Positions 5,532 to 26,949 of a stretch of DNA of 64,000 nt are shown here, one piece after another. The notes beneath the pieces were generated by a model. That model was not told where the DNA came from. It worked only from the letters and a program-made list of their open reading frames with translations, and did no database searches. The stretch is from Lepidodermella squamata (lineage: Eukaryota; Animalia; Gastrotricha). The first letter of the stretch is position 1. The number at the start of each line of letters is the position of its first letter. Both the position numbers and the translations under genes were made by a program. Location of the stretch: assembly GCA_047495785.1 (NCBI GenBank), contig JBLDXI010000013.1, forward strand, positions 868,001-932,000. The letters run 5' to 3'.

Positions 5532-8500
5532 TTATGAGGATCCTTTAGTAGTCGTTGATCGACGTCTGCTGGTTCCAGCATTCGTCAATGGTTTTGTGGT
5601 AGAGGTGGCGGCAGCTATTTTCCGAGTAGCGCCTTGCACAGGCTTCGTCGTTGCGGCAGCATTTGCCTTTCTCGTGGTGCCTGGCTTTTTCGTCGAAACT
5701 TTGCTGTAGCGATTGTAGCGCCTAGACTTGGTCGGATCGGCTATTGTTTCCATTATCCAGCTCAAGAATTTACAGGGCCTGAACAAACAATTTTAAAAGC
5801 TGACGATTTTTACATGGAATATTGCATTACTTCGTGTAGACTCCTATGAAAAACAAAAATTAATGAAAATTAGTTGAATTGATTGAAACTCGCTTTACCG
5901 TAGAGATTTTTCTGCGCACAACCATAGCCATACGAGGTCTGAAATGACAATAAACTAGTATAAGCTAGTTATCTTTTGAGTTGAGTCATCCTTACAGCTC
6001 CATGGAGGTAATACGGAGCGTTTTCATTGGTGACATCCTCGTGTTTGCGGCAAGCTAAGGGTCCTCCGGAGTCACCCTGGCAAGCATCGGTACCTAGTAA
6101 TAAAATACACTATAAAGTTGTGACAATCAATGGCGCAGAAACAGAAATTACCGCCCTCGGCATAACCAGCACATGCCTGAATATTCAGTAAAAATTGTAT
6201 GATTATAAATTGATTCGACTGAATGTCATACCATTGAATCTACGATGATATCGGGCTTCCCTTCTTCCGTATAGCCAGCCTGGCATGTTTCCTTTGAAAC
6301 ATACGGCACGATAGCCTTTTGGAGAATTTCCGCGGCTTGACCGTTCTGAACCGTTGTACCCCAGCCTTGAAGATTGTCATTAGGAATCGACGATAAAAAA
6401 AAGATTAAATTTATCACCTGAAATCAGGCAAGGATCTCCGGCGTTAGCTTCACTGGAGCATTCAGAATCCAGCATACAGATGGGTCGAATTTTCTCGCTG
6501 AAGGTGACCGGAACTAGAAATATACATTTTCAGCTGCAATAAATAACCTTAAAAGACAAAGTTACGTTTCAATTTGACGAGAGCAATATCGTTGTTATGG
6601 TTAGCCTCGTTATATTGAGGATGTGCCAGCCACATTTCAGCGTCAATGTAGAGCTCATCCTCTATTTGTTTACTTTGGTATTGCGAACCCACGGCAACTT
6701 TAATACTTTGAAAGAAAAAAATCTTTGAATTTTAGTATTAATTGATAAGTACATACCCATTAGCCGTCGCCTCAGGATCCATGCAATGCGCAGCAGTTAC
6801 AACCCATTCTTTGTTTATAAGGGATCTTTCAAGTGTTCGAAGCCAATTATCATCCTCAGTCGCATTAAAAAAAACTTACCCGCCACATAAAGATGGTCCT
6901 ATATCGAGTCGAACTGTAAGAAAATCATGAAGTGCCGAGTTTTATATGCTGGCAATCAATTTGATCTCACCTTGCCATGGCAATTCATTAGGATCAGCGT
7001 CCTTGCCGTTCACGATGGACTGCATGTTCCGATTGCGGGAAGATGTAGAATTCCGCTTAGATGTAATCAAGTTTCGAAGTAGTGTTCGAAGACCCTGTTG
7101 TTGCTTGACGTTCGCCAACCCACATTCTGTTGAAAAATCATGGCATAAGTATAAAATTATTCCAACTAAAGCAATAATGCATACGCGGGTCATTTTCCCA
7201 AGCAGTCGGTATAGGTGAGGGATCAGTTGCTGGGGTATCAGCGGTTGTTTCAGTGGTTTCCGATGGCGGTGTGTCAGTTGGTGTCTCAGAGGTTGTTGTT
7301 GTAGTAGTAACAGGTGTTGTGCGTTTGTTGAGCCCGGTGATCGAATCGATCCAAGTTCGAACCGCACACGGTCTCGTGTAAATCGAGTAGAACCCGTTGG
7401 CCCCACATTTGTCTACGACAGATTTCACTCCTGATAGATAGTACCTATCATCCGTAACGCTTGGTGGTATACAGGCCAGCGGACCACCGTCATCTCCTTT
7501 ACAGGTATCGATAGCCGTAGTAGTATCGCCAGCACAAACCATGTTATCGGTCAAAGGCCGCCGAATGCCATACTTTCGGAGTCCGCTTTTGCATGTTTCT
7601 TCAGAAACAATTTGAACTTCGGCTCTTTGAAGCTTTGTTTGGATTTTAGAAGATTCGATTGACGCAGTACCCCAACCGCTGATAATTGCTATTTAATGAT
7701 GGATCATTAGATCTTATCCTACAGCTTTTCGAAAACAAACCGGTTTTTCCCTCGTCGCAGTCGCTTGAGCAGGATTTTGGTAAACAAATAGGCTGCACGT
7801 CATCGCAAAATACCAAGGGCTCTGAAGAAATCGATGTGAAAAATCAATGGATAGAAGTGACGGATTACGAACTTCGCAGCTCTATCAAAGCTATGTCGTA
7901 ATCGTAGGTCGTATCATTGTATCTTGGATGTTTGGAGAATCCAGCCGTTTCTGCACGTTGAGCTTTGTTGGTATCCGCTGACATTTCACTTCCGGCGTAG
8001 TAAACATTAATTGAAGCACCTTTAAAACATGGATAATAATTGAACCAAAGCAAAATCTGTAACTTACCAGTTTCCAGGCAGTGAGCAGCTAGCGCGAAAA
8101 AATTGTATAGAGAACCTTGAATAACACGTTTTCAAAGATTCATACCCGTTATGACCCACTTTGCATCAATAATTGATCCACCACATAGTTTTATTCTTCC
8201 TGTTTGACCGCTCTTAACTTCGACTCTGGCCATCCATCTATAAGAACAAATCTACGATGCCAACATAGAGATAACTAGTCGAATAAATTACGGAACGTCC
8301 GTCGCTTCGGCTGAAGTGCCTCCAAGCAAGCTGTTGGTATTCTGAACACCGGCCACTGCGCTAGCGGTCAATCCACACGATCCAGCGGGAATAGTTTGTT
8401 GTTCACATTTTGACCTCGGAGGAGGAGGCGGCGGAGGTGGATCAATTATCACTGTGGGTTCTGTCGCTTTTTTAACCTCGGGTGGAGAGGTTGGAGGAGT

Positions 8501-8618
8501 CGAAATGCACCCCAAGCTTCTCTCTATAATCGTTCATTAAATACAATCAGTTATCGATTTGAGATCTAGCTAAATTACCGATCAACAAAGCTGTTGCGTA
8601 AAGTATGACGAGATTCAT
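5532..8618 (-). CDS. Secreted two-domain trypsin-family protein A: inactive domain 1, active domain 2
   Basis: Signal peptide MNLVILYATALLI. Domain 1: [24 protein letters not shown]. Domain 2: [27 protein letters not shown]. Basic Thr-rich tail. Short GT-AG introns. Confidence 0.88.
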
Positions 8619-8948
8619 GACAGAAATGCGAAGTGAAGCTCATACAGGATGTTAACAGGCTACAACAGCTTTATAACGCCTCATTTTGTAAAAGCGGACG
8701 CTCGCGAAAATCGTGTATGCAGCAAAGGACTAATACGTGCCGGCTTACAGCATGTAAGCTCAAAGAAAACTGTACACACACGTTCTTTTTTCAACTGCTC
8801 GCCCCAACTCACAGAGGATCTATCCGGAAAGTAGAAAATAGCTCGTTGATGTTCTGCCAGTGTTTTATTCAACTCCAAGAATGAAAACACCACATGAAAA
8901 ATGTTTAGCTATCACTTGAATATAAAGCATCAATCAATAAAGCTTCCG

Positions 8949-11900
8949 CTACGGCGCGTTTGTTGCTGTTCGGCGCCTAGAAGTCGCTTGTTTGTTGATA
9001 GTCGTTGTAGGTTTGTTTGTTCTCGGTGATGTTGATGGCCGCTTCGGGGTTGAATTGGCAGGCCTCACACTGCTTGCTGCACGCCCAGAAGGCTTTCCAG
9101 TTACAATGAACCTGTGGCCGTTTCGAAGTGAGTTGCCTCCACTCGATTGAATGGTTTGCGTTATCCAGTCCATGAATAGACACGGTCTGACAGTACGCGT
9201 TCAATAAAATGCGCAAAACGCGAAACCAAATTTTACCTGGTGTAGATGCCTTGAAAAACATATATCAATAACCGTCTTGTTAAATTTGAAAAAATCTGAA
9301 GCACCTACCGTATAAGTTACTCGTAGCGCCGCAGGTGTGGCCTGTCGTTGTCTGTATTAGAAACAATAAAAGCCTGATTCCGTGATACGTGAATGTAGCA
9401 GCTTACGATTCCACTCAAATAAAATTTTCCAGCTTCCGAATCCTTGTTACACAGCAATGGTCCGCCAATGTCACCTTGGCATGCATGGATTCCTGTACCA
9501 AAATAAGGAATATTCTTGCTAAAGGAAAACCGAGATGGTGAACTATTTTACCTCCGCTGTCATAGCCCGCACAAATTTGGGTTTCTTGTATGTCGAAATC
9601 GAATACTGTTCTTGTCTGCAATCCGTCTTGGCAGGATTCTTTCGAAACCAAAGGCACCGGGGCTTTCTGCAGCTTGTTTGACGGGGCTCCTCCATCTTCG
9701 CTAGATCCCCATCCGGCTATGTAGCACAGATCTCCTGGCGTAGCTTGACCGCTACATTCCTTATCATATAGGCAAATTGGCTTGATTTTATCGCCAAACG
9801 TCACAGCCTCTGTATGGAAATGAAATTTATCCAAGTTTCAGACTCTCCCATTGTCCTAACTTGGACGAACACTAACGTTTCAGTTTGATGAGTCCTATGT
9901 CGTTGAAGAGATTTACGCGGTCGTAGTCAGGATGAGCGAACCATGTAGTCACTTGCTGCGAGATTTCACCGTCAGCTGTCGAATCTCTCGCAACAGATCC
10001 CATATAAACAGTGACTCTGATCAAAAAGTTGGAAAGATTTAAGATGGCAGCAGAGAATTTCAAGCGAAATTTACCCTGCTGATGTGCGGTCAGCGTCCAG
10101 ACAGTAAGCAGCTGGCAAAGAATTCGGATTGTATTTGTATGGCGCAAGTTTTTAAAACTTACAAGTGATTATCCAATTCTCGGAAATCAAAGATCTGCGA
10201 CATGATAGTTAACTATAAAATCACTCTTCATCTTTAAAAGAACTCACCCTCCGCAAACATTGTCACCCGACTCGATGCGCACTGATTAGTGAATGGAACA
10301 GTTAAAAGCGACAGAGGATTAATCCAAGTTTAGTTACCCAGCCATGGATATTCATTATTAATCGCCTCCTCGCCATTGCCGATACGATTATTTCCTCTCC
10401 TCTGCCCAGCTCTTTTCACCGTTGTTGATGTTGGTCTTTTTGTTGTAGACGCAACACGTTGGTTCTTCGCTACGGAGTTTGCAGAGTTAGGAACTCCACA
10501 TGCTGAAACAGCGAAATAATGGAATTTAGTTCTCTCATTATCGGAAAGGTGGAATGGACGATTTATGTCATACTAATTTCGATTACTAACTAGCAATATT
10601 CTGCCACTGAAGAGGCGTCGTTGGAGAGTTGGTGGAGTCTCCGCCTCCAGGCGTCGTCGCTGTTTGCTCTGTTACTGCATCGGTTGGCGGTGCCGAATCG
10701 GGTGTTGTGCCTTGAGAGTCGTTTGGATCGTACGTGATAACATCAGAAGGCGTCGTTTTTGTCTGACTTGTCCCACCGGTAGGTAATCGAGGTGTCGACG
10801 CGCCGGCTTTCAGCTCCGGAGCAACGGATTCAATCCATGCCATGACTTCGCAGGGTCGGGTGTAGGTCGAATAGAAACCAGGCGAACCACAGCGATCGAC
10901 AACCGATTTCACTCCACTTAGGTAATAATTGTCGGTTGAGACGCTAGGAGGGATGCACGCCAGCGGGCCCCCGTCATCACCCTTACAAGTGTCAGCTCCA
11001 TTTGCTACATCACCGGCACATACCATTCTGTCGGTGATGTTCCTCTTGATGTTATACTTCTTGTAACCGCCTGCACAAGTGTCTTCGGAAACGATTTGGA
11101 CATTTGCCATTTGCAAGGTTGCTTGAGTCTTCGTTGAATCGGCTGATTTAGTTCCCCAGCCACTGATGATTGCTAGAAGAATAAATGAGATCGGGTTGGC
11201 ACTTTAAAATTAGCCTTCGACGCCTCACCTGTCGATCCGGCGTCACAGTCCGACGAGCATGATCTTGCCAAGCATATCGGTTGAACGTTATCCGTAAAAA
11301 CCAATGGCTCTACGTAAGTAAGAGATAACCAAATGTTTGCTATATGCAATCTTCAATTCCTACTTCGGAGTTCTATCAATGCGACGTTATAGTCTCTTGT
11401 TATGGCGTTGTAGCGGGGATTTCTCTGAATAGAGCTAACGTCGGCTTTGTAAGCTGCATTGCTCTCCGCAGAGATTGTTGACCCACCGTAGAAAACAGTT
11501 ACACTGGCATCTTTAAGATCGTTTTTTGAAATTCTGAATCCATAGTATTATTTCACTTGGCTTTCTTACCACTAGTGACGCAGTGTGCAGCTTTATAAGG
11601 CAAAAAAATGAACATGGGAATTTATTGAAAAATTTGCCAAGTCATTTACCGGTAATAATCCATCTTGAACTGATGATCGAGCCACCACACAGGGTTACTT
11701 TCCCTGATGTTGAACTTTTCACCTCCAACCTAACTTGCCACCTGTAAACAAAATCCTCATTAGATCAAGGATCGATGCGATGTAAGGAGATTAACGGAAC
11801 GTCAGCTATATCAGCAGCGGAACCTGCCAAGATGGCCTGAGCTGGAGCTGCGCCAGAAGCTGCAGCCGCTGTTAGGCCACACGAGCCCGCAGGTATTACA

Positions 11901-12139
11901 GTTGATTCAGCGACGGCTGGGGCAACTTTCCCAGGAGCTGACGGCTCCACGGTAACAGCGGGAGCTGGTGCTTCTCGCGGAGCTTGAGTAGGAGGAGTTT
12001 TAGCCGGTTGGCAGGATTCCAATCCTATGTAGAATAATCATTGTCTTAATCAAAGCCTGTTAGAGTTCGATTTCAATTCACCAGTTGGAAGTGACAGAAA
12101 CACCAAGACGATGCAAGGAAACAAGCTACTGGTAGACAT
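8949..12139 (-). CDS. Secreted two-domain serine protease homolog B: both domains inactive
   Basis: Signal peptide MSTSSLFPCIVLVFLSLPT. Domain 1: [21 protein letters not shown]. Domain 2: TSAYC, NDIGLIKL, HACQGDIGGP. Confidence 0.86.
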
Positions 12140-12449
12140 CCCTTTGTCAATCCAGTTGCTGTTTTTCAGTTAATACATATGCTCGCCTTGTTAGCGAAGT
12201 ACTTAAAGTATTAAATTCTTGACAGAATCACGCTTTCCCCCGCCGTAATATGAACGTGTAGTAGTTTTCGTGACGTGCGGCATGAGTATGGACCGTTACA
12301 ACAACATCTAACATCCGTTCTAGCAAGGTTGGCTATGGTACAGGGTTCCGCTCTTTTATTTTCAAAGTCAAGCCCTCTATAATTTGTAATGTAATTAAAA
12401 GCATGACGATAAAACACGTCATTCCAATTAGCGTTAGTTTTCGATTTTT

Positions 12450-15445
12450 TCAGTTCGGATACGCATTTATCGTTTGCAAAACCCATGACATAAAGCTGCA
12501 CGGCCGAGAGTAGATCTGAAATTTAAAATTTTTGAAATTGCAAGCTAAAAGGTGGATCCAACTTACGCCGTAAAGGCCTTTACGTGCACAACCGTAGCCA
12601 TAGGATGTCTGAAATTCGCGAATTTGAGTCACTTTCACTTTCTCTTGGTTATCAAAACTTACCACACCATGAAGGTAAAATTGGTTCGTGAATGTATCGA
12701 TCTTACAAACCATGGGACCACCCGAATCCCCTTGACACGTATCGACCCCTGAAATAAATTAGACATTTATTGAAGATAAATGATATAAACAGGTGCTAGC
12801 GCACCGCCATCGATGGAGCCACCGCAAATCTACGTAAATAATAATGCTTAATGCATAGAATACTAGGGTAATGCTTCCGTATGCTACCTGTCTTGAGTTC
12901 AATTCAACGTAGTAGCCGCTTTCTGTAGTTTTTGCCTGACACGTTGGCTGATAGACCAAAGGAACGTTGGCCTTCCGAAGTTGATCCGAAGCTGTCGTTC
13001 CACCCTCACTGGTTGTGCCCCAGCCACTGATGGCGCAAGAGGTTCCCTCGTCAGCCTCCCCGCTACAAGAAGCCGGTAGCAGACATACAGGTCTTATCTA
13101 ACTTGGAAACTCGGTATTAATCTGAATTTTACATAAGAAATTTTTTACATTATCGCCGAAAGTAACAGGGTCTAGGGTAATAAAATAGAAATGTAACTCA
13201 ATTATTCAAATAAGATGCTGCAAAATCTTACCGCTAAGCTTCATTAACGCGAGATCATAGTCATGTGTCTATAATTGAGGTGGGAAGTAACATTATCATT
13301 TCAACATTCGGAACAAGCTTTACAGTGTCGTCGTAATTAGGGTGCGCAATTTCGTACTTGGCATCAATCACCAACTCGCCGCTCAACTTGGTGCTGATTG
13401 ATTGACTGCCCAAGTAAATAGTTGATTGCGGGCTGGATTCGAACGAATTCGTTTCACATGGTTAGTCGTCATTATTATTATCTTACTTAGACATTCCACG
13501 AGAAGCAATACAGTGAGCCGCTTTTAATATTTTCTGACATTAAAGAGCTTCGCTGATTTTAAAACTCTTACCAGTCATGACCCATTGCTCATTTATAAGG
13601 GATCTGTAATCTCAAATAGTTTTCAGTCTTTCAGAGATGTAGACGTCGCTTACCCTCCGCATATGGAAGTTGAACCACTTGCAACTTTGGTCTGAATCCT
13701 GACTGAATTCAAAAATGGCAAATTAGGTCTATCAAAGTGCCTTGAGAATATTGATGAATCACCTTGCCAAGGAAATTCATTCGTTTTTGTCACCCTTTAG
13801 CAGAAAAAACAGTAAGGGAACGCTTCTCGATGAATCAGCACTACTTACTGGCCGCCAACGATTCTCCCAGCATTCGATCCAGCATCGGAATACTTACTTT
13901 TACCGCAATCTGAAAAAGAAGCATGGTTTTTGTAGATTGTTACTTATAGCAAAATTTGGTTCACTTTGGTCGTTGACCCATCTCGTTAGTGTTGGTGGAG
14001 CCGGTGGGACAGGAGCGGGTGGCGCTGGCGCTGGTGTGACGGGGCCCGCCGCGGCTGGGGTTCGGCGCCTGGTTGGTCTGGTCGCCGGAGTTGCTTCATC
14101 AGTGACGACAGGCACCGGTTCTGGCGTTGGTGCCGGTGTCGTGGTAGTTACGTCGTCCAAAGCTGTTCCAGTCGTTGTTTTTATCCACTTGATTACAACA
14201 CATGGCCTGATGTAGGTTGAATAAACCCCAGCAACGCCGCATCTATCGACGATGGCTTTCACCCCGCTCAAGAAGTACTGGTTATCTGAACCGGCTGGTT
14301 TACACACCAAAGGACTGCCGTCATCACCTTTACAGGTATCAGCTGCTCCAGACGGTACCCCGGCGCAGGCCATACGTGACGTGACTTGGCGATCGATACC
14401 GTTGTTCGTGAAACCTTGCTGGCAGGCCGAGTTGGTCTGAATTTGAACTTTCGCCTTCTGCAACACGTCAGATGGCCGAGAGCTAGTTGCAGAAGTCGTA
14501 CCCCAACCCGAGATAAACGCGTCATCCCCAGCCTTACAATCGGCGGTGCATGTTTGAGGAACGCAAATAGGTTGAACTCGGTTGTTGAACGTAATACTGC
14601 CTAGATATTATTCGATTTGTTAAAAATCGAGTCTATAGCTAAAGATATACTTTCTATTTGAAGAAGCGCTATATCAAAGTCGCCAGTATCAGCGTTGTAG
14701 CTGGGGTGCTGGTAGACCTTTGATACTTTGTATGAAGCTCCATCTGACAGAGTGTGTGCGCCAACTATCGCCGTGATGTCGGAGTCTGATTTTAATTTAG
14801 TTTATTTAAGAGAACCTTTATGCCTGTAAGACCTTACCGTCAACGTAACAATGCGCAGCGGTGATGATCCATTGCTGGCTAACAATGGCTCCTCCACACA
14901 AGTAAACTCTACTGGTGGATCTGGATTTTACATTCAATCGAACATTCCACCTAGAAACCGAAGGTTCATAACTTGTCGAGTTTATATTGAATTAAACTAA
15001 CGGGTATTCATTTTGCTGAGCGGCGCTTCCGCCAAGAACCCTGCTGCTACTTGACCTGGCAGGCAAGTTTCTATTGTAGAAAGCGCTGTCGTCGCCTTCT
15101 CCTGCTGGTGGCTCATACATATTGTAGCCACAAGTTCCCGATGGAATATTGTAAGTATTAGGCGGGGGCGGTGGAGGGGGTGTCATGGGAACGGGGACTT
15201 GATTGGGACTTGGAGCCGGGGTTGACGGGGCTGGAGAAAGAGTTATCTCAAGTTTGTTCGCTATCGTTGTAGTCGGCGCAGATTGGGGTGAAGGCGCTGA
15301 AGGAGAAGGTGGAGAACCCAGGCAAGCATTCACAGAGTCAAGATGAACTGCTAATCAAATTTGAAAATTATACATTTGTGCTTTGATTGGGCTCATCAAA
15401 CAAACCAGTGCAAAGAAGAAGGTAAAAAATGGATGTCACCGCCAT
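12450..15445 (-). CDS. Secreted two-domain trypsin-family protein C: inactive domain 1, active domain 2
   Basis: Signal peptide [13 protein letters not shown]. Domain 1: [27 protein letters not shown]. Domain 2: [28 protein letters not shown]. Confidence 0.87.
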
Positions 15446-15966
15446 GATGACACCAGCTAAAATGAAGTGTTAAAATCACACTTGGTATATAGTGAAACAG
15501 TTCACTTAAAAGTTATTTGTTATTTGTTTGTTGCTATTAAAACAACACGTTTTGTTGAAAAAATTACGCTTAAAAGGCAACAAGAGAGCCTGGTATGTGT
15601 AGTTATGTCATGCCTTCAAGTTACACGCGGACTACACGGGCGATCGCCAGTTGTAGCGAACTTTAACAACACACGAACACGACCTATACCGCCCCCTATC
15701 ACGAGCCTCACTTTAACTATTACTATACAATCTTGCATCCACCTAGGCTCGTGACAACATTTGAATGTACACTTTTTACCGTGTAGTCTTCGTATCAGCT
15801 TTCCTCCAGTAATCGGCTTTCGCGGCCGCCGAAGCACAGACATAAATAATGTTTGAAAATAAAAAAGATAAGAAGCATTTATTTGATACACGAATAATTC
15901 AGAATGAAATAGCTGTAGTTTTGAAATTAAATTCCTTTATGTTGATTAATTTTGAATTGTCCGCCA

Positions 15967-18900
15967 TCAATTGCTCTCCCTAAAAGAGAACACAGCAATA
16001 AGGTGGTATTCGAAAGGACTTGAGCGTCACTTACATTGTGCCAACGATCCAATCCATGAATTCTCGATGACATGGACGCGTGTATACCTAGGCGGAACAG
16101 TGATTACAACTATTGTAGAAAAGTGTTACTCTTACCCCATAATGTCCTTTCTGTCCGCAGCCATAGCCAAAAGATGTCTTTGCGAAATCATAAAAAATTA
16201 TTACATTACGGCTTTAAGCGTTAGCATGAACTCACCACTCCCTGTAAATAATATCTTTCCTTTGAGCCTTCTTTCTTGGGACAGGCCAGTGGACCTCCGG
16301 AGTCGCCCTGGCATGTATCTATGCCTGTTTGTCAACTTTTATTACAGTTGCTATGATGCTCATGATAAACTGACCTCCTTCTTCATAACCAGCACATATC
16401 TGTAGGAAGACAATGTACTTAACAAATAATCTAAACATTTTTAGCGTAAAGTAACCTTGCCCATCGTTGACACCGATCCTCCTGAAAGACTATCTAGCAT
16501 TTGGGTGCAAATTTCGTCTGAAACAATGGGCACAGTGGCCTTTTGCAGCGCATCGGAAAACGACTTCGGAGAGTCGGGGTCCGTTTTGCCCCAACCAGTA
16601 ATCACGCATTCCGTGCCAGGAGGAAATTCGTTCGTGCATCCTGACTCTAACATGCATATTGGCCGAATCTTTAGGAGGGAATTCATAAATTATTGAAAAT
16701 ATTTTAAAATGCCAATTGCCGATCTTACGCTATTCGTGTAATTCACTGGTCCTGTAAAAATAAAATATTTAGTTAGATAAATGTTTACCATATGATGAAC
16801 TCACTGTCTAATTTGAGTAGAGCAATATCGTAGTCCTTTTCAAGTGAAACACAATAATCAGAACGGGCTGTTCAGCAATATTTTTTCAAACCTTCGATCC
16901 TTCTCGGTACAGGAAATGAGGTATTTGCAGAACAGCATCTCGTATTACCTGAATATTCACCAACATTGTTGACAGAGTGTGGCTGCCAAGGTGGATTTTG
17001 AAAGTTGACCTAGCAAAGACTTTAATAATATATCAGGAAGTCATCGAAGTAAAATTGCCATACTTTGGATTGACTTTTCTTCCGACGATACAATGGGCAG
17101 CTGAAATTTTTATTTTGGCTTTATGTGTGATGGCCTTTATTTGTGAAAGAACTCACCCGTCAGCACCCATTTCATACCAATAAGCGAGCTGTGTAGATGG
17201 GAGTACTAATTATTAGACTACTTTTTACTAAATAAAGCGCTCCCTACCCGCCGCAGATAGACCGCTTTTCAGTCCCCGGTGTAATGGTAACGACCCGAGC
17301 TAATAGGAAAAAGGATACTGATTTACAGCTGTAATAAAACAAGAAGGTTGTTAACCTTGCCATGGGAATTCATTCATGTCGGCATTCCTGTGTCGCAAAT
17401 TCTTTAGTTTCAATTTCTTGTGAAAGGATGTAAACCTACTCTCCAAAAAGGATCCTAGAATTACCATCATTCCTGATGCCACATAACGGATTATTCCGCC
17501 AGGTGCGCAAGTAGCTAGTTTTAGTTGTTGCCTCAGTTTCTAGCTCGGCTGTTGTAGTTTGCTTCGTAGTCGCTGCTTCGGTCACGATCGGCTCCTCTGT
17601 TGCTGTATCTTGTATTGGGGTCGTAGCTGGTGTTTTAGCTGTACTGGTTGAGGCGATAGTTGTAGAGAAACTTATCCCCGTTTTGCTTTTGATCCAATCG
17701 ATGAAGTAACAGGGGCGGGTGTACACTGTATAGACCCCAGGTGTTCCACATTTCTCAACGAAAGACTTGATGCCACTCAGGAAATACTGGTTATTTTCGC
17801 GCTTGCATGACAAAGGATCGCCATGATCATCTTTTGTGAGGACAAGATAAATGAGAATATGAGCATCCTGAAAAACATGGTAAATTCATACGCTTGCAGG
17901 TATCTGCCGATCCGGATGGAAGACCTGCGCAAAGCATATGAGGGCGAACTTTCTTATCAATGCCATTTTGTTTGAAGCCCCTGTTGCAGGTCGTGTTTGA
18001 GACAAGCGGAACTTCAACAGGATCAGCGTCCCAGCCGGAAGCAATCAAGCTATCAGACCCGATACAGTCTAGGGAGCAATCCGCCGGAAGGCATACTGGT
18101 TGCACAAGATCCGAGAAAACAAGCGGACCTGAAATGGTTCAACTGGTTGGAAGCAAAATCGGAGCAAAATAATATGCTAAAACTTGAAAGATGAAGCAGA
18201 GCAATGTCGAAATCGTTGTTGCCAGTGCCTTTAAAGTGAGTGTGCTTGTATGATTTCAGCACTTTGATGTGAGCGATTGGACGGTTTGAGGATCTCTTTA
18301 ACACAGCCGAGCCACCAACAGTCACCATTATATCGGCATTATCTGCAAAAGTAATACCATAGGTAACTATAAAGCTGAATCTTTCGCAATCAATACCGTC
18401 GCTTATTAGGCAATGTGCCGCAGTGATCACCCACTCCTTATCGATGATTGCGCCGCCGCATACATGTGTCCTTCCTGATCCTAGGTCTTTAATTGTAATT
18501 CCAGCCTGCCATCTTGAAAAACGATTGGTGTTATTAGAAAGTCACGAGGGAAATGAATTAATTAACGGAAAATCCAATTTTTGATTGGTGACAACGCGAG
18601 CAACATCCCGAGAAGGATCTTCCGATAGGTTCGCGGCTGTTAGCCCGCAAGTTCCTGCTGGAATCGTAGTTTTCGGAAAACCATCCGGTGTTTCAGATGA
18701 AATCCCCGTTTTCGTCGGAGAATTCAAGTCGTCATTTCCAGACCGATCATTCAGGTTCAATATTTGGGGCGGGGGTGGAGGCGGCGTTGGTGCTGGTGCC
18801 GGAGCTTGCACAGGAGCTGGAGGTGATGGTGGGCTGGCGTTGAAACACGATTGGACCTCGTTTAATTCTGAAAATATTCTGCGTAAACGTAGAGTCGCGA

Positions 18901-19001
18901 ATGATAGAAAAAGCCACACCAGAGAGCAATAATATTGAGGTCCAGATGAAATTTAAAATTCCGAATTTACTCGGCCTTCTCTTGCCTGGTGTGGGAACCA
19001 T
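15967..19001 (-). CDS. Secreted two-domain trypsin-family protein D: inactive domain 1, active domain 2
   Basis: Leader [27 protein letters not shown]. Domain 1: TAAHC, DFDIALL, DTCKHDHGDP (spliced). Domain 2: [28 protein letters not shown]. The 3' end is 16031 if unspliced, or 15967 via a last short intron. Confidence 0.84.
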
Positions 19002-19562
19002 TTTACATGCACACTCGCCGAAATGAGTAAAAAAAAAAAATTTTTGTAGTATGTGAGACTATTTTTCTGAAACTGCCTGCAGTCTATTGTCTCTCAAAAA
19101 GTGTTTGTCCCTTCGCATTTTATAGTCATCCTTTTATCTTAGTTGCAATGTCTCATTTTTCATGGCTTGATGTCAAAGAAAGGCTCCATCAAAGGAATGA
19201 ATTCATTTTTGAAGCCGTCCATTATGAAGTGGCTAAACAGCGTAACAATTATTTTTTACTCTTGTAACAGCGTAAAAAAGCGATTCGCCCGCGAATGCGT
19301 ACGAAGCATTTTTTGAAAGGTGCATGGCTTGCTAGCGCCTTTGTTTTTTTGTAATCACAGAACTGTGTTCACACGCGTAATAAAGTATCGCAACATATCG
19401 CAGAATAAAGACGAAGTTTAGTGCAAACTCTGCATTTTAGGGGCGACAGGTTCCATTTCTGAGCACTATCTGTTAAAAACCACAAAAAGTCCAAGTAAGA
19501 TTTTCGTATTCAAGCCTGACTCCTGACTTATTCACTCTTAGGTATTTTTTAGCCCTTGAAAT

Positions 19563-19978
19563 ATGAGCAACTGCTTCATCGCCATCAGCTGTTGTCTCTT
19601 GATCTTAGCGAGCAATTGCAGAGCTATGTCGGATATTTTAGACTCACCTTATTTCGGTAATCTTGCCAGGACTAATATTGGCTGCCAAATCAATTTGAAA
19701 TTCAGGAAATATCATAATTACATGCATGTGTCGAAGCGACTCGGATTGCTTTTCGTGCGGTGACGCAGGAACGCCTTTGACTTGTGTTGATAGGTAAAGT
19801 TTTAGTTGATCTAATGGTACAAGACACGCTCTTCGTATGACTTGTGAGCAGGACTTGTCAATGCCCAAGTACTCACCATCCGGTTTATGACCCTAACAAC
19901 TTTCGCGGCTGGCGATGCAGGCCAAGTTGGAACAGCATTCAATGGCTGGTAATGGATGGTAACAGAAGAAGATACTAA
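19563..19978 (+). CDS. Small secreted 8-cysteine peptide 1 (3 exons)
   Basis: Two GT-AG introns removed gives MSNCFIAISCCLLILASNCRA-MSDILDSPYFGNIIITCMCRSDSDCFSCGDAGTPLTCVDRTCQCPSTHHPVYDPNNFRGWRCRPSWNSIQWLVMDGNRRRY*. Same intron positions as its neighbour. Confidence 0.85.
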
Positions 19979-20156
19979 TCTCTTTATCATGATTCTCAGC
20001 ATTCTCCCGATTAATACTGCCTCCGAGTGTCTAGTTGTTTTGCATGTTATTTTTCTACGATGAGTGTCTAATTACTTTAATGCGGATCAATTAAAATTGC
20101 TAGCTGCAAACAATATACCCATGCCTCTAACTCAACAATAGGGCATATTTTGAAAG

Positions 20157-20583
20157 ATGAATAACGCTTACTTGGCTGCTCTGTTTCTCGCCGTCATATG
20201 TGTTACTGGCTGTTATTCAATGTCCGACATCCTGGACTCGCCAACTTTCGGTATAACTTCTTCCAGCCTCATACTGTTGTTAAACCGATTTTTCGTATTT
20301 TTCAAGGGAACTACGTCTTCACCTGCTACTGCTCCAGGGACTCTGACTGTGATCTATGTGGAGACGGCATCCGGTTAACCTGCGTCGATAGGTTTTAATT
20401 ATTTTTCTCAATCCTTTTCTCTTTAAAATGCCCATCTTCGGTAAAAGGAAATGTCAGTGCAAGCCTGGTTATCGTCCAGTTTACAATGACGGGGCCTTCA
20501 AGGGCTGGTCCTGCACTCCCAACTGGAACGACATTGTCTGGGCTACTGCCCCTACCGTTGTGCCGCCAGTACCTGGCAAGTAG
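20157..20583 (+). CDS. Small secreted 8-cysteine peptide 2 (3 exons), paralog of peptide 1
   Basis: Spliced: MNNAYLAALFLAVICVTGCYS-MSDILDSPTFGNYVFTCYCSRDSDCDLCGDGIRLTCVDRKCQCKPGYRPVYNDGAFKGWSCTPNWNDIVWATAPTVVPPVPGK*. AATAAA near 20658. Confidence 0.87.
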
Positions 20584-20691
20584 TGTTAACTAAGACAAGT
20601 CCATTTATGTCAATCTTGCAAATATTTTCGGATTTTATTTTGGTTTAAGAATTCTAGAATAAAAGAATATCAGTTTTCTCATAGTTAAATT

Positions 20692-23600
20692 TCAATCGTC
20701 CTCTTCTCCGTCGGCAACTAAGCGATTTCTCCGCGTGGTCGTAGTCGCCAACCTTCGTTGGTTGCCGGCAGGAGTTGAAACTTTTCTTGTCGTTGCTCGG
20801 CTAGGTGTCGTTTTGGCTCGGGTAGCTGCAGCTCGTGGTGTACTCCTAGCGCTGTTCACTCCTCGCCTGGCACCACCGTCCTCCGCTAGAACCGAGTTGA
20901 TCCAATCGAGATAAGCACAGGGCCTCGCGTACACTCCTAAAAGAATTATTTCTCAAGTTATCCTAGAATTATTCAGCGATCAACTTACCGACATATCCAG
21001 CTAAGGCACAGCCCTCTCCGAATGATGTCTAATGAGTATTCTTGAATTATTAAGTATTACTTGAACCATCATTCAACTAACCACTCCATTTAAATAATAT
21101 TTTCCATTTTTTGTGCAGACCAAGGGACCACCTGAGTCACCCTATTTTAAGGACAACCAGACATAAATTTCGTCAACCTTTAAATTAGACAGATTTTACC
21201 TGGCAAGTATCAATACCACCTGCTGTATCTCCAGCGCAAATCTGTGGAAAACTTTTGATTAAGCAGCAATCCTAAATTTGGTTAAAGATGTACCATTCCC
21301 TCCGTAATAACCCTTTTCTTTGGCGAATTGATGTAAATATCTGCACATTGATCACGCGGAGCAATAGGGACACTCGCTTTTTGTAGTTCATCCCCAGCCT
21401 GGCCATTACTCAAATCAACCAGACCCCATCCTAAAAAATTCAGTATTATTTATTTAAAACCCTGATTCGATCCTTACCTGAAATAAAACAACTAGTGCCT
21501 GCTGGCTCCTCCTCTGCACAGTTCTGCAGTAAGCAAACTGGTTTGACAGTATCGCTGTACTCAAACGCAGCTATTAAAATTTAATGTATGTTATCTACTA
21601 TGAATGTGAAATTCTGGCAAAAAAAATTCACCGTCAAGCTTCAGCAAGGCTATATCGTTGAAATTAGTAGCTTCGTCGTATTGTGGATGGCACACCTCTT
21701 TCGCGATTGTGTAAGTTCGAGTTTCAGGTTTATCACGGTCATCGTATTGGTTTTGGATGCCGATAAATGCCGATACTACGTAACTAATCACAGTTGTGAA
21801 TGAGCTTATTACCTTGGCGAAAATTAACGAGTGTTACTTCTTATTATGAGTTTGACAGACACAATGAGCAGCTGTAAACGCAAGAGATTAAAGTGCATAT
21901 TGATTTAGGATCGGTAATTTGTTATACCTGTTAAAACCCATTGATGGTTGATAATAGAACTAGTGTGAATAGGAAGAGTGGTATAAGTACTTGGTGAGAA
22001 GAAAGCGCAATACCCTCCACAAAGTTCGGAAGTTCCCATGTCCGGATCTTTAGATATAAGCAGAACCTGCCAAGGGAATTCATTTTGCTTTGACGAGATT
22101 CCTGGAAATATATTAGTTCAAGTTGATGACAGACTGATTTTCGCGATATTGGCAGAACCAACCCCCAATTATTCTCGACAGATTCCCCATTTTCCTTGCT
22201 GAATTGATAGCTTTGAAGGTGAAAGCTCGAATCGCTTGCGGATATTTGTTTGTGCCGCATTCTAAAACAAATATGATGGGTACTTATAATAATTTGCTAT
22301 TTGAAATTGTATTACGATCGTCATTAGCCCAAGACGTGGTTGGACTGGGTGCTGGGTTGGTGGCTGCTGTTGAATCTGTGCTCGGAGCATCAGTAGGAGG
22401 GTCCGTAGGCCTTGCTGTTGTTGCTGTTGCTGAAGGTTTAGTTGACGGGCTTCTATTCGGCACGGGCCTGGCTGTAGAGGCGACAGAAGCCGCCTGGGTA
22501 GTCTTTAGGCCATTCTGAGTGACGCGATCGATCCAGTCTATCACAGCACTGAATCTGACTTAAGAGCAATCGAGAAATTCGGGTATGAAATTAACTTACC
22601 ACGGCTTAGTGTAGGTTGAGTAGAAGCCACTAACACTGCACTTATCAACCACGGACTTCACCCCACTGAGTAAGTAAGCATTGCCACCGCTACCTGTCGG
22701 CTTACATGACAAAGGACCACCGTCGTCGCCCTTGCAAGTGTCAGTTATCAAGGTTTTTGAAACCGTATCCCCAGCACACACCATCCGATCAGTTACCCGA
22801 CGTTTCACGCCGTTGTCATTAAACCCCTTTTGGCAGGCCTCTTTCGTAACAATTTGAACTGTACCCTTTTGCAGAACCTGCGTTGGTAGTTGTGTTTGGT
22901 CGATGGTTGACGTTCCCCAGCCAGATATCATGGCATTGTCACCTGGCACGCAGTCATCATCGCAAGTACGAGGGACACAAATCGGCTGGATCTTTTCATT
23001 GTATTCAAGCGGGGCTGAATCGGGAAAGGTTTCATCGAAATCAAATGTTTTCAATGATTTAATTACTTTCAAGCTCCAGCAAAGCGATGTCGTAGTCGTA
23101 GGAAGTCGAGTTGTACTTAGGATGGCGTGAGGCCCTTTTCACTTTTACTGACGTTGCTTCGGCAGACTCTCGACCGAGACAATGGCCACCTGCGTATACT
23201 GTGATCGTCACGCGGTAGTTATCTATTTAAAGTGTAAAGACTCTTAGGACATAAGTCTAGGTTTAATCCGACCATCAAAGAAGACGCAATGAGCTGCTGT
23301 GATAACGTAGTCTGACAGGATGATGGATCCGCCACACATCTGATATTTCCCACTTGATGGATTCAAAGACACAATTCGCACCTGCCACCTGAATAAAAAA
23401 CTGAGTATAACTTGCTTATCAGGAATTCAGAGATTGCATACGGAATTTCGTTTTGTTTTGAATTCACGCCCATAAGGGCGTTCATCGGATTCACCATGTA
23501 CGCATTTACACCGCAAGATCCGGTCGGAATGGCATTTTCAAAGGTCGGCGCATCGCCAGCTGGGCAGGGTCGCTGAGGATCAGGCGTTGCGATTGGATCA

Positions 23601-23820
23601 ACTACGAATGTGTTCGGTGCAGGTTGATCCCTTATGGTATTGCCGGAACTGTCAGGAGGTGTGGTCGAAGCTGCAGCAGGTTGCTTGGATGTGCAGCAAT
23701 ATCCCTTTTGCACAACTTGATACAAGAATTTTCATATTTCTATCGGCTAAGCCAACGGCGTTTCTCCTTACCTTGAAAGAAAACGGCTAGCACCAAAATC
23801 AGCAATCGACAGCAAATCAT
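20692..23820 (-). CDS. Secreted two-domain trypsin-family protein E: inactive domain 1, active domain 2
   Basis: Signal peptide MICCRLLILVLAVFFQ. Domain 1: [22 protein letters not shown]. Domain 2: [22 protein letters not shown]|GDSGGP. Arg/Thr-rich tail. Confidence 0.87.
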
Positions 23821-24190: not shown

Positions 24191-25929
24191 TTAGGAGGTT
24201 TCAGTGGTCTGCTCGCCGTCATTTTGATCCACAGAGCCTGCCAGCAGATCAAGTAAGCTCCTACCCGAGGCTTTTGCAAGGGCGCTCGCATGGCCCGCCG
24301 TTGTAGGAGATGATTTTGTTGTAGTAGTCTTTGCCGTCGTTGTAGTTGTCGTCGTCGGTGGTTTTGTGGTTGTTGTTGTCGTTGTTTTCGTTGTCGTCGG
24401 TTTCGGGGTAGTTGTCGTCGTTGTTCTTGTTGTGGTCGTCTTCGTAGTTGTCGTCGTTGTCGGCTTTGTCGTTGTGGTTTTTGTTGTAGTTGTCTTAGTT
24501 GTCGTAGTTTTAAGAGTCGTAGTCTTAGGAGTAGTCGTAGTAGTCGTAGTTGGCTTCTTTGTCATCGGCAAGGCCTTTGGGGTGTTGGCAGCAATCGTCG
24601 ATTGAATCCATGATATGTAATTGCATGGTCTAGCGTAAACACCCAGCATGCCTATAGCATAGAGTACATAAAAAAGTTTGAGACGACAAATTTACGAACC
24701 TGGTTCAGCACATCCGATGCCAAATGAAGTCTAATTTTAAAATATTAGTTTAAATTAAGGCGAGTCGGGCAAAACTTACCACACCATTAAGATAATGCTT
24801 GCCATCAGACCCAATGCAGGTTAAGGGGCCGCCAGAGTCTCCCTAAAAACGTAGCTAGAGATAAGTCATAATTGAAGCTATAAATCCCGCACTTGGCAAG
24901 TGTCGATGCCTCCTTGAAGCTGACCAGCGCAAACCTGTAATAACATCAACCTATTGATTGGAATTTCCAATGTCTATAGTCTTCTAATTACCATTCCATT
25001 CGTAATGTTGTATTTAGGCACCGTTTTGTCATAAATATGTTGACAATCTGTTCGATCCCCCATTTCGACAGGTGCCTTTTGCAACTCGTTGGGAACCGTG
25101 AATGGATCCAATTTTGAAATGCCCCAACCTAAAAATTCGAGCCGTCTTTATTACATTTCGTCCGAACGTTTCAAAGCAAACCTGCAACAGTACAGCTGCT
25201 GTGAGCGGGAGCTTCTCCTGTCGCACAGTTCTCGAAAAGACACACAGGGCGAATTGTATCAGTGAAATTAATCGCTCGTTCCAACTTCAGAAGGGCGACA
25301 TCATTATCAGAAGTGTCTGCGTTGTATTCAGGATGGTAAATTTCAGTTTCGGTTCCGAGCGTGATCTGGCCAGGAACTGTTCCAGAGAAATGATAATGGC
25401 CTCCGAGTAGTATCGATGTTCGGCCACTGTTCCATGTGAAAATCACTAAAGTTTCAGACTCGAGGTTATCAAATAACTAACCCTTCGGAAATGCAGTGAG
25501 CAGCTGCAAAATGGGAGCAAAATTTAGATTATAATCTAAGCAAGAGACGAATTGTTCACTGACCTGTTAATACCCATTGGCTGTTTATCAGAGACCTGAA
25601 ATGAAAATTGCCATGATAATTATTGATTAGCCAGGAAACGCGATTCAGTATACCCGCCGCATTGAGAACCTCCGCCTGCATCAGCTCTGAACGTGAGCAG
25701 CGCAATCCACGGAAATTCATTTATTTGAGCGGTTACTCCGCCAATAACCCTACTGGCAGCCATAGTTTTCGGTTGACCGCAAACTAAATGTATTAAAATT
25801 CATGCAGATCTTGTTTCTTCTATTTTCGCGAGTCTTACCATCTGCGTTAATCCAAGTTGAATCCGCTATGACGACAGGATGGACGACTATTGCCATCAAG
25901 GCAGCAAATAAAGTGTAGAATTTTTTCAT
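24191..25929 (-). CDS. Secreted single-domain trypsin-like protease F with Thr/Lys-rich mucin-like tail
   Basis: Signal peptide MKKFYTLFAALMAIVV; R-VIGG, AAHC, DNDVALLKL, DTCQ|GDSGGP; (K/R)TTTT repeats at about 24300-24560. Confidence 0.88.
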
Positions 25930-26399
25930 TTTAGCTATCAAATTCCTTTATTCACTTAATTTTCACCTGCTTTTATCCATTATTGTACTCTTGATACTTA
26001 GTAGAAACGTGGCTGCGCGACGCTGGCACTTGATATACGTGCTTAGTTTTCATGACGTCTTCAATAAATTACATCAAATAATCAAAAAATGTAGGTTAAA
26101 GCTCAGACAAATATTCAAAATTCCCCTGTTATTTTGGAACCAATGAGCTGCCTTAACTGCAATACGGAATTCTGTTCAATAATGATTGCCAAGCAATCGT
26201 ACTGAAGTTTTAACGACGGCGAGAGCGAGAAGTCAAGTAGATTCTGTTCCCAGCGACCTGTAGGCTAATATTTGACGAATGAAGGCCCTCCTTTTCGTCC
26301 TGTGTTCGGCCGTTTTTTCAATTTTCCCAATTTAGGCATTTTTCGTTGTAAATACTTGCAAATTAAAAAAAATGCAAATGTTTAGCTCGTAATAGACGT

Positions 26400-26945
26400 T
26401 GCAGTAGTCCCACCCTAGTTTAAACCTGGGCACTCCTTTGCCATATTGCTTGTCTGGCATGCAGTGTCCGCTGGTATACCAGTTTACCAGTTTTACCAGT
26501 TTATCGTTCTCCATTCTTATAATACGGCTTAGAAATCTAAGGTGACAATTTTCGACTTTCCCCTCGCACGTCTTTCTAATTTCCTCATTTCTTACTTTAT
26601 CCAAGATTGAAAGGTTTGCTATTGGCCTAAGCCATCTCATTTGCGTTACATCTAGCCTGAATTGGAGCGCTACAGTTGTGTTCCAGCTTTCGCATGCATA
26701 GATAAGGGCTCACTTCACGGCTCGTTTCCCCTTCCTTTTAGCGGGTATATATACTTACTTTCGATTTGTTGCTGATAAATCTATTTAGTGCTCTGAAGCA
26801 AGATCCTGCCCTCTGCATTCTATCTTCGATTTTTTTGTGAGCATAGGTATGTGCCATATTACCTCGTCACATATTACGCTACCTAGATATTTAAATGTCG
26901 TTAAGGTTTCCAATTGCTCACCATTCATGGTCAACGGGACAACGG
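26400..26945 (-). mobile_element. Degenerate RTE-clade non-LTR retrotransposon fragment (RT C-terminal region)
   Basis: Broken frames read PLTMNGEQLETLTTFKYLGSVI, LIYACESWNTT..RLDVTQMRWLR and DKVRNEEIR, typical of the RTE RT thumb region. Confidence 0.8.
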
Positions 26946-26949
26946 GCTG

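What the first reader, a model, noticed from the sequence alone, without database searches (positions are those of the whole stretch)
5532..23820. Five-gene family that fuses a dead protease domain in front of a second trypsin domain
Seen: in genes A-E domain 1 keeps His57 but has lost Ser195 (GDDGGP in A, B, E; GDDGSP in C; HDHGDP in D). It also replaces the S-W/F-G pocket segment with a conserved K(S/A)(V/I/F)V(D/E)(K/R)C, and only C keeps a normal R-VLGG activation site. Domain 2 has a full triad and Asp189 in A, C, D and E. Established: serine protease homologs act as cofactors or recognition modules (haptoglobin, arthropod clip-SPHs), and polyproteases exist (ovochymase, polyserase, Nudel). 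Inference: the same inactivation kept across divergent paralogs points to a selected in-cis cofactor, exosite or auto-inhibitor module. I do not recognise this architecture, which has no clip, CUB or LDLa domain, as a named family. Best candidate for a new system here.
Basis: partly seen in the sequence, partly recalled or inferred. Interest (0 to 1): 0.78.

Follow-up and report, generated by a model that had tools for sequence, protein, structure and literature searches.

The report
Dead-plus-live tandem trypsin gene family
Five neighbouring genes of an unidentified small invertebrate each encode one secreted protein in which a trypsin-like domain that can no longer cut is tethered in front of a working trypsin domain. 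This is a new, lineage-restricted branch of the already known "polyserase" type of multi-protease protein, and what it does is untested.

Summary
On the minus strand at 5532-23820 lie five intact genes (A-E) of 17-19 exons. All introns are GT-AG and 42-88 nt long, and the products are 664-746 aa. Each gene has one signal peptide, a trypsin-fold domain 1 (D1), a Thr/Pro-rich linker and a second trypsin domain (D2).

- **D1:** keeps His57 but has Asp at position 195 (His in D), and Val-Val replaces Trp215-Gly216.
- **D2:** has a full triad and Asp189 in A, C, D and E. It is dead in B.
- **One protein:** in every gene a single exon carries the end of D1, the linker and the start of the D2 propeptide. 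In gene D that exon runs into the D2 activation site.
- **Selection on D1:** D1 is as conserved as D2 while synonymous sites are saturated. In B, D1 is the slowest-evolving part.
- **Relatives:** the only ones found are three metagenome fragments. Two of them come from near-identical contigs that show the same layout with Glu195.
- **Known class:** tandem active and inactive S1A domains in one chain are already known (polyserases, insect polypeptidases, Nudel). This is therefore a new variant, not a new system.

The mechanism, a tethered non-catalytic binding module, is inferred. The scan had not noted this family before on other DNA.

The parts
5532..8618 (-). Gene A: 18 exons, 722 aa. It encodes a signal peptide, D1 (His57, Asp102, Asp195), a Thr-rich linker, D2 (full triad, Asp189; Ser instead of Arg at P1 of the activation site) and a basic/Thr-rich tail.
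   Evidence: Hand model checked and reproduced by my spliced aligner. All 17 introns are GT-AG and 48-58 nt long. Pfam Trypsin match.
7185..7688 (-). Gene A exon 7. One exon carries the C-terminal half of D1 (GDDGGP, KSVVDKC), the linker and the W-x-N-D start of the D2 propeptide. The next exon starts at 7126 after a 58-nt phase-1 intron.
8949..12139 (-). Gene B: 18 exons, 732 aa. D1 has His57, Asn102 and Asp195. D2 is also dead (H57Y, S195I, D189H), yet the ORF is intact.
12450..15445 (-). Gene C: about 19 exons, 676 aa. D1 has an R|VLGG site and GDDGSP. D2 has R|IVGG and a full triad. There is no C-terminal tail.
16031..19001 (-). Gene D: about 19 exons, 664 aa. It has the most divergent D1 (K-H-D-H-G-D-P: G193H, S195H, G197D, and a deletion in the 148 loop). 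D2 is intact.
   Evidence: D1 of gene D has the longest branch in the tree.
17440..17830 (-). Gene D joining exon. One uninterrupted ORF encodes the D1 C-terminus (DHGDP ... KSFVEKC ... RPC), the linker, the W-R-N-N-P-L-C-G motif and the D2 activation site SR|ILFG.
   Evidence: Stop-to-stop ORF 17885..17439. Exon limits.
20692..23820 (-). Gene E: 17 exons, 746 aa. D1 has His57, Asp102 and Asp195. D2 has SR|IIGG and a full triad.
24191..25929 (-). Neighbour F: a single-domain active trypsin with a Thr-rich tail. Its exon 1 (signal peptide plus S-T-W-I-N-A-D) ends at the same phase-1 intron, before V-C-G, that joins the linker to D2 in A-C and E.
   Evidence: It groups with D2 of gene E in the tree.
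28525..30223 (-). Neighbour G: a near-copy of F.

Best explanation
A-E are five old tandem paralogs. Each is transcribed and translated as one secreted pro-protein with this layout:
- a signal peptide and a short Pro-rich segment;
- D1, a trypsin-fold pseudoprotease;
- a 60-130 aa Thr/Pro-rich linker, probably O-glycosylated and extended;
- a propeptide starting W-x-N-x-x-x-C-G;
- an R|I/V activation site;
- D2, a trypsin-specificity protease.

Shown here: the single ORF, the intact gene models, the residue states, and purifying selection on D1.

Inferred:
- A trypsin-like enzyme cuts at R|I(V/I)GG and activates D2.
- The heavy chain (D1 plus linker) stays attached through the conserved propeptide Cys, which would pair with Cys122 of D2 as in chymotrypsin.
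- D1 cannot hydrolyse peptides. It uses its remodelled former active-site cleft (Asp/Glu195 next to His57; Val215-Val216 and Ser226 narrowing S1) as a binding surface.
- That surface captures or positions a ligand (substrate, partner or inhibitor) for the tethered D2.
- In B, where D2 is dead too, D1 would act on its own as a serine-protease-homolog-type cofactor.

The repeated unit (C-G propeptide, protease, Thr-rich tail) suggests the family arose by in-frame fusion of two tandem trypsin genes.
For: One ORF:
- Complete ATG-to-stop models for all five genes, with all introns GT-AG and 42-88 nt long.
- One hydrophobic signal-peptide exon per gene.
- The exon holding the D1 C-terminus runs without a stop through the linker into the W-x-N motif in every gene. 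In D it runs on into C-G and SR|ILFG of D2.
- The same phase-1 intron splits W-x-N-x-x|x-C-G in A, B, C, E and in the metagenome genes L001/L002.

Conserved architecture elsewhere: L001 and L002, two near-identical ENA contigs, carry the same two-domain gene with Glu195, Asn102, KSVVDAC and an intact D2. Their D1 hits this cluster best in the window's own genome.

Selection:
- D1 pN is 0.27-0.47 against pS of about 0.8 (saturated), and the linker is less constrained.
- For L001 against L002, D1 dN/dS is 0.30.
- Mean column conservation is 0.62 in both D1 and D2. D1 segments 189-198 and 209-228 score 0.89 and 0.79, against 0.92 and 0.79 in D2.
- In B, D1 has the shortest branch (0.24) and the dead D2 a long one (1.22).

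Whole-gene duplication: all D1 form one clade at 100/100. The A+B and C+D pairings appear in both domain trees.

Residue mapping: the alignment to the enteropeptidase light chain gives S195 to D, F215 to V, G216 to V and G226 to S, with S214 kept.
Against: - There is no transcript, protein or activity data, so splicing, secretion, cleavage and disulfide tethering are all inferred.
- The signal peptides were judged by eye.
- I could not fold or search the joined models, so no D1-D2 interface or pocket geometry was examined.
- Synonymous saturation makes dN/dS between paralogs only semi-quantitative. The one unsaturated pair (L001/L002) differs at few sites.
- Several in-frame 'introns' that my aligner proposed in linkers are probably not real. 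These are B intron 7, C intron 2, D intron 6 and a 180-nt one in L001.
- A's D2 has no Arg at P1, and three D1 have non-basic pseudo-activation sites, so processing may differ between copies.
- Nothing identifies the ligand.
- A long flexible linker fits a capture module, an inhibitor decoy or an auto-inhibitor equally well.
Confidence: 0.6

Rival explanations
1. D1 is an inhibitor decoy or sink. Its inactive cleft still binds canonical protease inhibitors, for example dietary or microbial ones, and so protects the tethered D2.
For: The most conserved D1 surface is the former active-site region. The oxyanion-hole glycines, Asp194 and Asp189 are kept in A, B, C and E. That Ser195 is not needed for tight binding of canonical inhibitors is my own knowledge (anhydrotrypsin, S195A trypsin), not tested here.
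Against: Val216 and Ser226 should narrow the S1 pocket, so inhibitors with Lys or Arg at P1 may not fit (mapping; inference). An acidic residue at 195 could repel the scissile carbonyl. There are no data on diet or inhibitors.
Confidence: 0.12
2. D1 is an intramolecular chaperone or auto-inhibitor. It masks or folds D2 until activation and is then shed.
For: D1 lies N-terminal to the D2 activation site, like a very large propeptide. The linker is long enough to let D1 reach the D2 cleft.
Against: In B, D1 is the most constrained part although D2 is catalytically dead, so D1 has value apart from controlling a cis active site. The conserved propeptide Cys suggests that D1 stays attached after cleavage (inference).
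Confidence: 0.12
3. The Asp/Glu195-His57 pair is a new functional centre in a trypsin fold, either a metal or cation site or a non-serine hydrolytic chemistry. On this view D1 is not dead.
For: An acidic residue sits at 195 in A, B, C, E and in the metagenome relatives L001/L002 (Glu) and P0007 (Asp). His57 is kept in every D1 whose N-terminal half could be read (A-E, L001/L002; P0007 is a fragment that lacks it). Other unrelated trypsin homologs in this genome also have D or E at 195, and at least two of them have TAAHC. In Tenebrio serine protease homologs, D or E at 195 is rare and His57 is kept in only 42 of 125 (PMC11172050).
Against: Asp102 is Asn in B and in L001/L002, and position 195 is His in D. 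No precedent is known to me for a carboxylate nucleophile in this fold. TAAHC is also held by the Cys42-Cys58 disulfide.
Confidence: 0.08
4. D1 and D2 are separate genes or transcripts joined by my models, or D1 is a decaying relic.
For: There are no RNA data. In gene A, reading through intron 7 yields an ATG followed by a hydrophobic stretch in front of D2.
Against: That ATG and hydrophobic stretch are absent from B-E. The linker exon is one open frame from D1 into the D2 propeptide in all five genes and in L001/L002, and in D it reaches the D2 activation site. D1 pN is far below saturation and equal to that of D2. All 17-19 exons per gene are intact.
Confidence: 0.04

Closest known systems
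Human polyserase-2 (PRSS36) and polyserase-3 (PMC1435904)
   Same: They are secreted proteins with tandem S1A domains that stay in one polypeptide and have no transmembrane or LDLa module. In polyserase-2 only one domain is active and the others lack triad residues. Cysteines flanking the activation sites are predicted to keep the domains linked.
   Different: In polyserase-2 the active domain comes first. Here the inactive one comes first. Polyserase spacers are short, whereas this family has a 60-130 aa Thr/Pro-rich linker. There is no specific sequence kinship: beyond the three metagenome fragments, the best database hits to D1 are generic TMPRSS-like proteins at about 100 bits and 30-39% identity.
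Insect 'polypeptidases' (Tenebrio SP-SPH with Sushi domains, Anopheles SP(H)-SPH-clipE-SPH) and Nudel (PMC11172050)
   Same: Two or three active or inactive S1A domains are translated from one ORF, and each domain is preceded by its own pro-region and activation site. The inactive domains are proposed to act as binding or modulating units.
   Different: Those proteins carry Sushi, clip or LDLa modules and are mostly ordered active-then-inactive. This family has no accessory Pfam domain and is ordered inactive-then-active.
Arthropod clip-domain serine protease homologs (e.g. PPAF-II, masquerade-like SPHs; PMC4372372)
   Same: They have a trypsin fold with the nucleophile replaced and act as non-catalytic cofactor or recognition proteins for active proteases. 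This is what D1 most likely 'works like'.
   Different: They are separate polypeptides with an N-terminal clip domain, usually with Gly at 195. D1 has no clip domain, has Asp or Glu at 195 and is fused in cis to its protease.
Xenopus ovochymase/oviductin polyproteases (cited in PMC1435904; details from my own knowledge)
   Same: Several trypsin-like domains are translated as one polyprotein.
   Different: They contain CUB domains, and their domains are released by processing. No sequence kinship was shown here.

Membership tests
Peptidase S1A / Pfam PF00089 Trypsin fold | Significant match to the Trypsin profile in both domains | tested here: met
   D1 exons match at E 1e-19 to 1e-22 and D2 exons at 1e-8 to 1e-13. 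The D2 exon of L001 matches at 7.6e-56. PDB hits are enteropeptidase and prostasin.
Active S1A protease | His57, Asp102 and Ser195 all present | tested here: met
   Met for D2 of A, C, D, E and L001/L002. Not met for any D1, nor for D2 of B (Tyr57, Ile195).
Serine protease homolog / pseudoprotease | S1A fold with at least one catalytic-triad substitution | tested here: met
   D1 position 195 is Asp in A, B, C and E, His in D, and Glu in L001/L002. Position 102 is Asn in B and L001/L002.
Polyserase / polypeptidase class | [quoted passage not shown] | tested here: met
   Met at the genomic level. One exon spans the D1 C-terminus, the linker and the D2 propeptide in all genes, and in D it includes the D2 activation site. 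There is one signal peptide per gene. Transcript-level proof is not available with these tools.
Orthologs of human polyserases, Nudel or ovochymase | Specific sequence kinship and their accessory modules (TM/LDLa, CUB) | tested here: not met
   After P0009 and P0007 (236-238 bits), the next hits drop to 100 bits or less and are generic TMPRSS-like proteins. No LDLa, CUB or Sushi domain was found.
Clip-domain SPH | N-terminal clip domain | tested here: not met
   Pfam finds nothing in the N-terminal exons of A-E or L001 at E <= 0.1.

The most novel reading that the evidence does not exclude
The acidic residue at the nucleophile position, kept together with His57 across old paralogs and in another organism, and recurring in unrelated trypsin homologs of this genome, marks a previously unrecognised functional centre in the trypsin fold. 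It could be a metal, cation or amine-binding site, or a non-serine chemistry. A built-in pseudoprotease would use it to control or aim the protease tethered behind it.
Probability: 0.1. Interest if true: 0.8.

Novelty: new variant of a known kind. Interest (0 to 1): 0.42.

Why it matters
Pseudoenzyme domains fused to their active relatives are a recurring but poorly understood design. The role of the dead domains in human polyserases and insect polypeptidases is still only guessed at.

This family offers a clean natural experiment:
- it has no accessory domains;
- five old paralogs sit side by side;
- one copy (B) has lost catalysis in both domains but keeps the pseudoprotease under the tightest constraint;
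- another copy (D) has a diverging pseudoprotease;
- two neighbours (F, G) consist of the active domain alone.

Comparing these by expression and biochemistry could show what a tethered dead trypsin domain does, and whether an acidic residue at the nucleophile position has a role of its own.

Tried and rejected
- **JGI metagenome scan.** I scanned with the D1 profile. 323 pattern matches were found and none was confirmed.
- **ESM Atlas.** The look-up with the D1 exon returned only generic trypsin clusters.
- **Identifying the organism.** The assembly is 121 Mb in 151 contigs. A neighbour gene of L001 has no match in the window's genome.
- **Is D/E195 unique to this cluster?** It is not. Other trypsin homologs in the genome also have it, though they are not of the D1 clade and have normal 214-216 segments.
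- **A separate start for D2.** The ATG plus hydrophobic reading through intron 7 of gene A is not conserved in B-E, so I rejected it.
- **Aligner artefacts.** My spliced aligner proposed in-frame 'introns' in low-complexity linkers. I removed the 180-nt one in L001. Eleven more were flagged among the A-E models. Those in linker or pro-region sequence (B intron 7, C intron 2, D intron 6) are probably not real. The others sit at intron positions shared between paralogs.
- **Literature.** Searches for this exact architecture or for rotifer trypsin families found nothing specific.
- **Left out by the operators' rule.** The joined (spliced) protein models were used only in my own scripts for alignment, substitution counts and trees. 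They were not sent to any search, family or structure-prediction tool, so no full-domain fold or D1-D2 interface model was made.
Full report
**What is there**

The window is eukaryotic DNA from a 121-Mb assembly with many very short introns. A six-frame motif scan and the stop-to-stop ORFs of the minus strand show five repeats of the same order of trypsin motifs between 5.5 and 23.8 kb. The order is TAAHC, a G-D-D-G-G/S-P motif, a K-S/A-V/I/F-V-D/E-K/R-C motif, then a second TAAHC and G-D-S-G-G-P. Pfam assigns the D1-bearing exons to Trypsin (PF00089) at E 1e-19 to 1e-22.

**Gene models**

I modelled gene A by hand from the sequence and checked it. It has 18 exons and 722 aa, and all 17 introns are GT-AG and 48-58 nt long. 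I then wrote a protein-to-genome aligner that handles GT-AG introns in all three phases. It reproduced gene A exactly.

With A as template it gave models for B-E. I completed these with the signal-peptide exons and extended them to their stop codons:

| Gene | Coordinates | Product |
|---|---|---|
| A | 8618-5532 | 722 aa |
| B | 12139-8949 | 732 aa |
| C | 15445-12450 | 676 aa |
| D | 19001-16031 | 664 aa |
| E | 23820-20692 | 746 aa |

None has an internal stop. All introns are GT-AG and 42-88 nt long.

A few 'introns' whose length is a multiple of three lie in open frame in low-complexity linkers and are probably aligner artefacts. They are flagged and do not affect the domains. The spliced proteins were used only inside my scripts.

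**One protein or two genes?**

Each gene has exactly one N-terminal exon encoding Met plus a hydrophobic core.

In every gene, the exon that encodes the C-terminal half of D1 continues without a stop through the Thr/Pro-rich linker. It ends in a conserved W-x-N-x-x motif. A phase-1 intron follows, and the next exon begins x-C-G.

In gene D that intron is absent. One ORF (17885..17439) encodes, in order:
- the D1 end (DHGDP, KSFVEKC, RPC);
- the linker;
- W-R-N-N-P-L-C-G;
- the D2 activation site SR|ILFG.

This links the two domains physically without any splicing inference. The only hint of a separate start is an ATG plus hydrophobic reading through intron 7 of gene A, and it is not conserved in B-E.

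**Residue states**

D1:
- It keeps TAAHC (His57) in all five genes.
- Position 102 is Asp in A, C, D and E, and Asn in B.
- Position 195 is Asp in A, B, C and E, and His in D, whose motif reads K-H-D-H-G-D-P.
- Alignment to the enteropeptidase light chain shows that Ser214 is kept, residues 215-216 become Val-Val (or Ile/Phe-Val), and Gly226 becomes Ser (Thr in D). Asp189, Gly193 and Asp194 stay in A, B, C and E.
- The pocket is therefore remodelled, not merely broken.
- Only C has a canonical R|VLGG in front of D1. D has R|VVTN. A, B and E have S|LLGG, A|ILAG and A|LMGV.

D2:
- It has the full triad and Asp189 in A, C, D and E.
- B's D2 is dead (Tyr57, Ile195, His189).
- The D2 activation site is R|I-x-x-G in B-E, but Ser replaces the Arg in A.

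A Cys in the C-G propeptide motif and the Cys of R/K-P-I/V-C in D2 are present in all copies. This is consistent with the Cys1-Cys122 type of tether; that pairing is my inference from chymotrypsin.

No Pfam domain other than Trypsin was found in the N-terminal exons or tails.

**Selection**

Between paralogs, synonymous sites are saturated (pS 0.75-0.87). Non-synonymous differences are:
- 0.27-0.47 in D1;
- 0.35-0.45 in D2;
- 0.42-0.58 in the linker.

D1 is therefore as constrained as the active domain and is not decaying.

Mean column conservation is 0.62 in both D1 and D2. The D1 segments equivalent to residues 189-198 and 209-228 score 0.89 and 0.79, the same as in D2. The former cleft is thus the best-kept part of D1.

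In the tree, B's D1 has the shortest terminal branch (0.24) while its dead D2 has a long one (1.22). This argues that D1 has a function that does not depend on a live D2 in cis.

All D1 form one clade (100/100), and all D2 plus the neighbours F and G form the other. The A+B and C+D pairings appear in both halves. This is consistent with duplication of whole two-domain genes.

**Relatives**

An exhaustive profile search of 1.84 billion representative proteins returned only generic multi-domain trypsins, apart from two metagenome fragments:
- P0007, with C-R-G-D-D-G-G-P and K-S-F-V-D-K-C;
- P0009, with G-D-E-G-G-P and K-S-V-V-D-A-C.

A word-indexed search of 5.8 billion proteins confirmed the gap. 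These two score 236-238 bits and the next hit scores 100 bits.

The contigs behind P0009 and P0151 (L001 and L002, from ENA) carry a complete gene with the same layout:
- a C-G pro-region and R|VVG;
- D1 with His57, Asn102 and Glu195;
- a Pro-rich linker ending K-W-L-N-H-P, then a phase-1 intron and C-G;
- R|VVRG and an intact D2;
- a basic tail.

L001 and L002 are near-identical, and D1 dN/dS between them is 0.30. The D1 of L001 hits genes C, E, A and B best in the window's genome, at 108-146 bits against 78 bits for the next hit.

The architecture, and an acidic residue at 195, are therefore conserved in at least one other organism. A scan of JGI metagenomes found nothing.

In the window's own genome, the D1 clade is confined to this cluster.

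**Origin**

F (25929-24191) and G (30223-28525) are single-domain active trypsins with Thr-rich tails. Their exon 1 encodes a signal peptide plus S-T-W-I-N-A-D. It ends at a phase-1 intron before V-C-G, the same motif, position and phase as the linker-to-D2 junction of the two-domain genes.

The repeated unit is therefore C-G propeptide, protease, Thr-rich tail. The two-domain genes look like an in-frame fusion of two such units, with the upstream tail serving as linker. This is inference.

The direction for F and G is unresolved. They group with D2 of gene E (97/91). A 75%-identical remnant of E's exon 2 lies at 27139-26921, just upstream of F. F and G may therefore be D2-only derivatives of an E-like copy rather than survivors of the ancestor.

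**Comparison with what is known**

Tandem S1A domains in one chain, with some domains inactive, are a described class:
- Human polyserase-1, -2 and -3. In polyserase-2 only the first of three domains is active and the domains stay in one chain (PMC1435904).
- Insect polypeptidases such as the Tenebrio SP-SPH proteins with Sushi domains, the Anopheles SP(H)-SPH-clipE-SPH proteins, and Nudel. Their SPH domains are proposed to modulate the active one (PMC11172050).

In Tenebrio SPHs, Ser195 is mostly replaced by G, T, N, L, V or I, with D and E each seen only 1-4 times. His57 is kept in 42 of 125 (PMC11172050).

So neither the architecture class nor Asp195 is unprecedented. The following points are particular to this family:
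- the inactive-then-active order;
- the absence of any accessory module;
- the mucin-like tether;
- the conserved trio of His57, acidic 195 and Val215-Val216;
- the lack of any close relative among the annotated proteins searched (records of this genome or near relatives may have been withheld from those searches).

I file it as a new variant of a known kind.

**Mechanism and limits**

The best-supported reading is a secreted two-chain zymogen in which a non-catalytic trypsin-fold module stays tethered to a trypsin-specificity protease and binds something through its remodelled cleft. Inhibitor decoy, auto-inhibitor and a new acid-His functional centre remain possible.

Every step beyond the ORF structure, the residue states and the selection signal is inference. 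I had no RNA, protein or structural data, and the organism remains unidentified.

Noticed in passing
window 24191-25929 and 28525-30223 (minus strand): Two near-identical single-domain active trypsin genes (F, G) carry long Thr-rich, mucin-like C-terminal tails. Their propeptide motif and phase-1 intron match the linker-to-D2 junction of the two-domain genes. They group with D2 of gene E.
   Followed up: partly
window 26921-27139 (minus strand), with retroelement-like ORF fragments at about 26335-27018: A remnant lies between G and F that is 75% identical at protein level to exon 2 (the N-terminal region) of gene E. It suggests a partial duplicate of an E-like gene whose D1 part was lost. Pfam gave no hit on the adjacent ORF fragments.
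   Followed up: partly
G000 C25:2369994, C26:655005, C33:1504773, C19:3480934, C25:741561, C1:2439157, C7:3448372, C81:929 and 7353 (loci L009-L015): Other trypsin-like genes elsewhere in this genome, not of the D1 clade, also have Asp or Glu at the nucleophile position (C-x-G-D-D/E-G-x-P). Several have normal S-W/F/Y-G segments, and at least two have TAAHC. The pattern gave 24 matches against 1 for the reversed control. Acidic replacement of Ser195 seems to recur in this animal.
   Followed up: partly
window 8949-12139 (gene B): Gene B has lost catalytic residues in both domains (D1: Asn102, Asp195; D2: Tyr57, Ile195, His189). Even so, all 18 exons are intact and its D1 is the slowest-evolving member of the family.
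   Followed up: yes
window 7003-7026 (gene A, D2 activation site): Gene A has Q-S|I-V-N-G where its paralogs have Arg at P1. Its D2 may therefore be activated by a protease that is not trypsin-like, or not by cleavage at all.
   Followed up: no
L001:4240-4610 (ENA metagenome contig): The linker of the metagenome homolog carries an extra Trp/Tyr/Asp-rich segment. It contains a second copy of the W-x-x-N-D-like motif (T-W-P-S-N-D) before the terminal K-W-L-N-H-P.
   Followed up: no
window 55387-56913, 38040-39632 and 47187-47816: The rest of the window holds ordinary-looking genes with large exons. From reading the ORFs only, these look like an SLC6-type transporter, an importin/HEAT-like protein and an HD-domain protein. 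I did not examine them.
   Followed up: no
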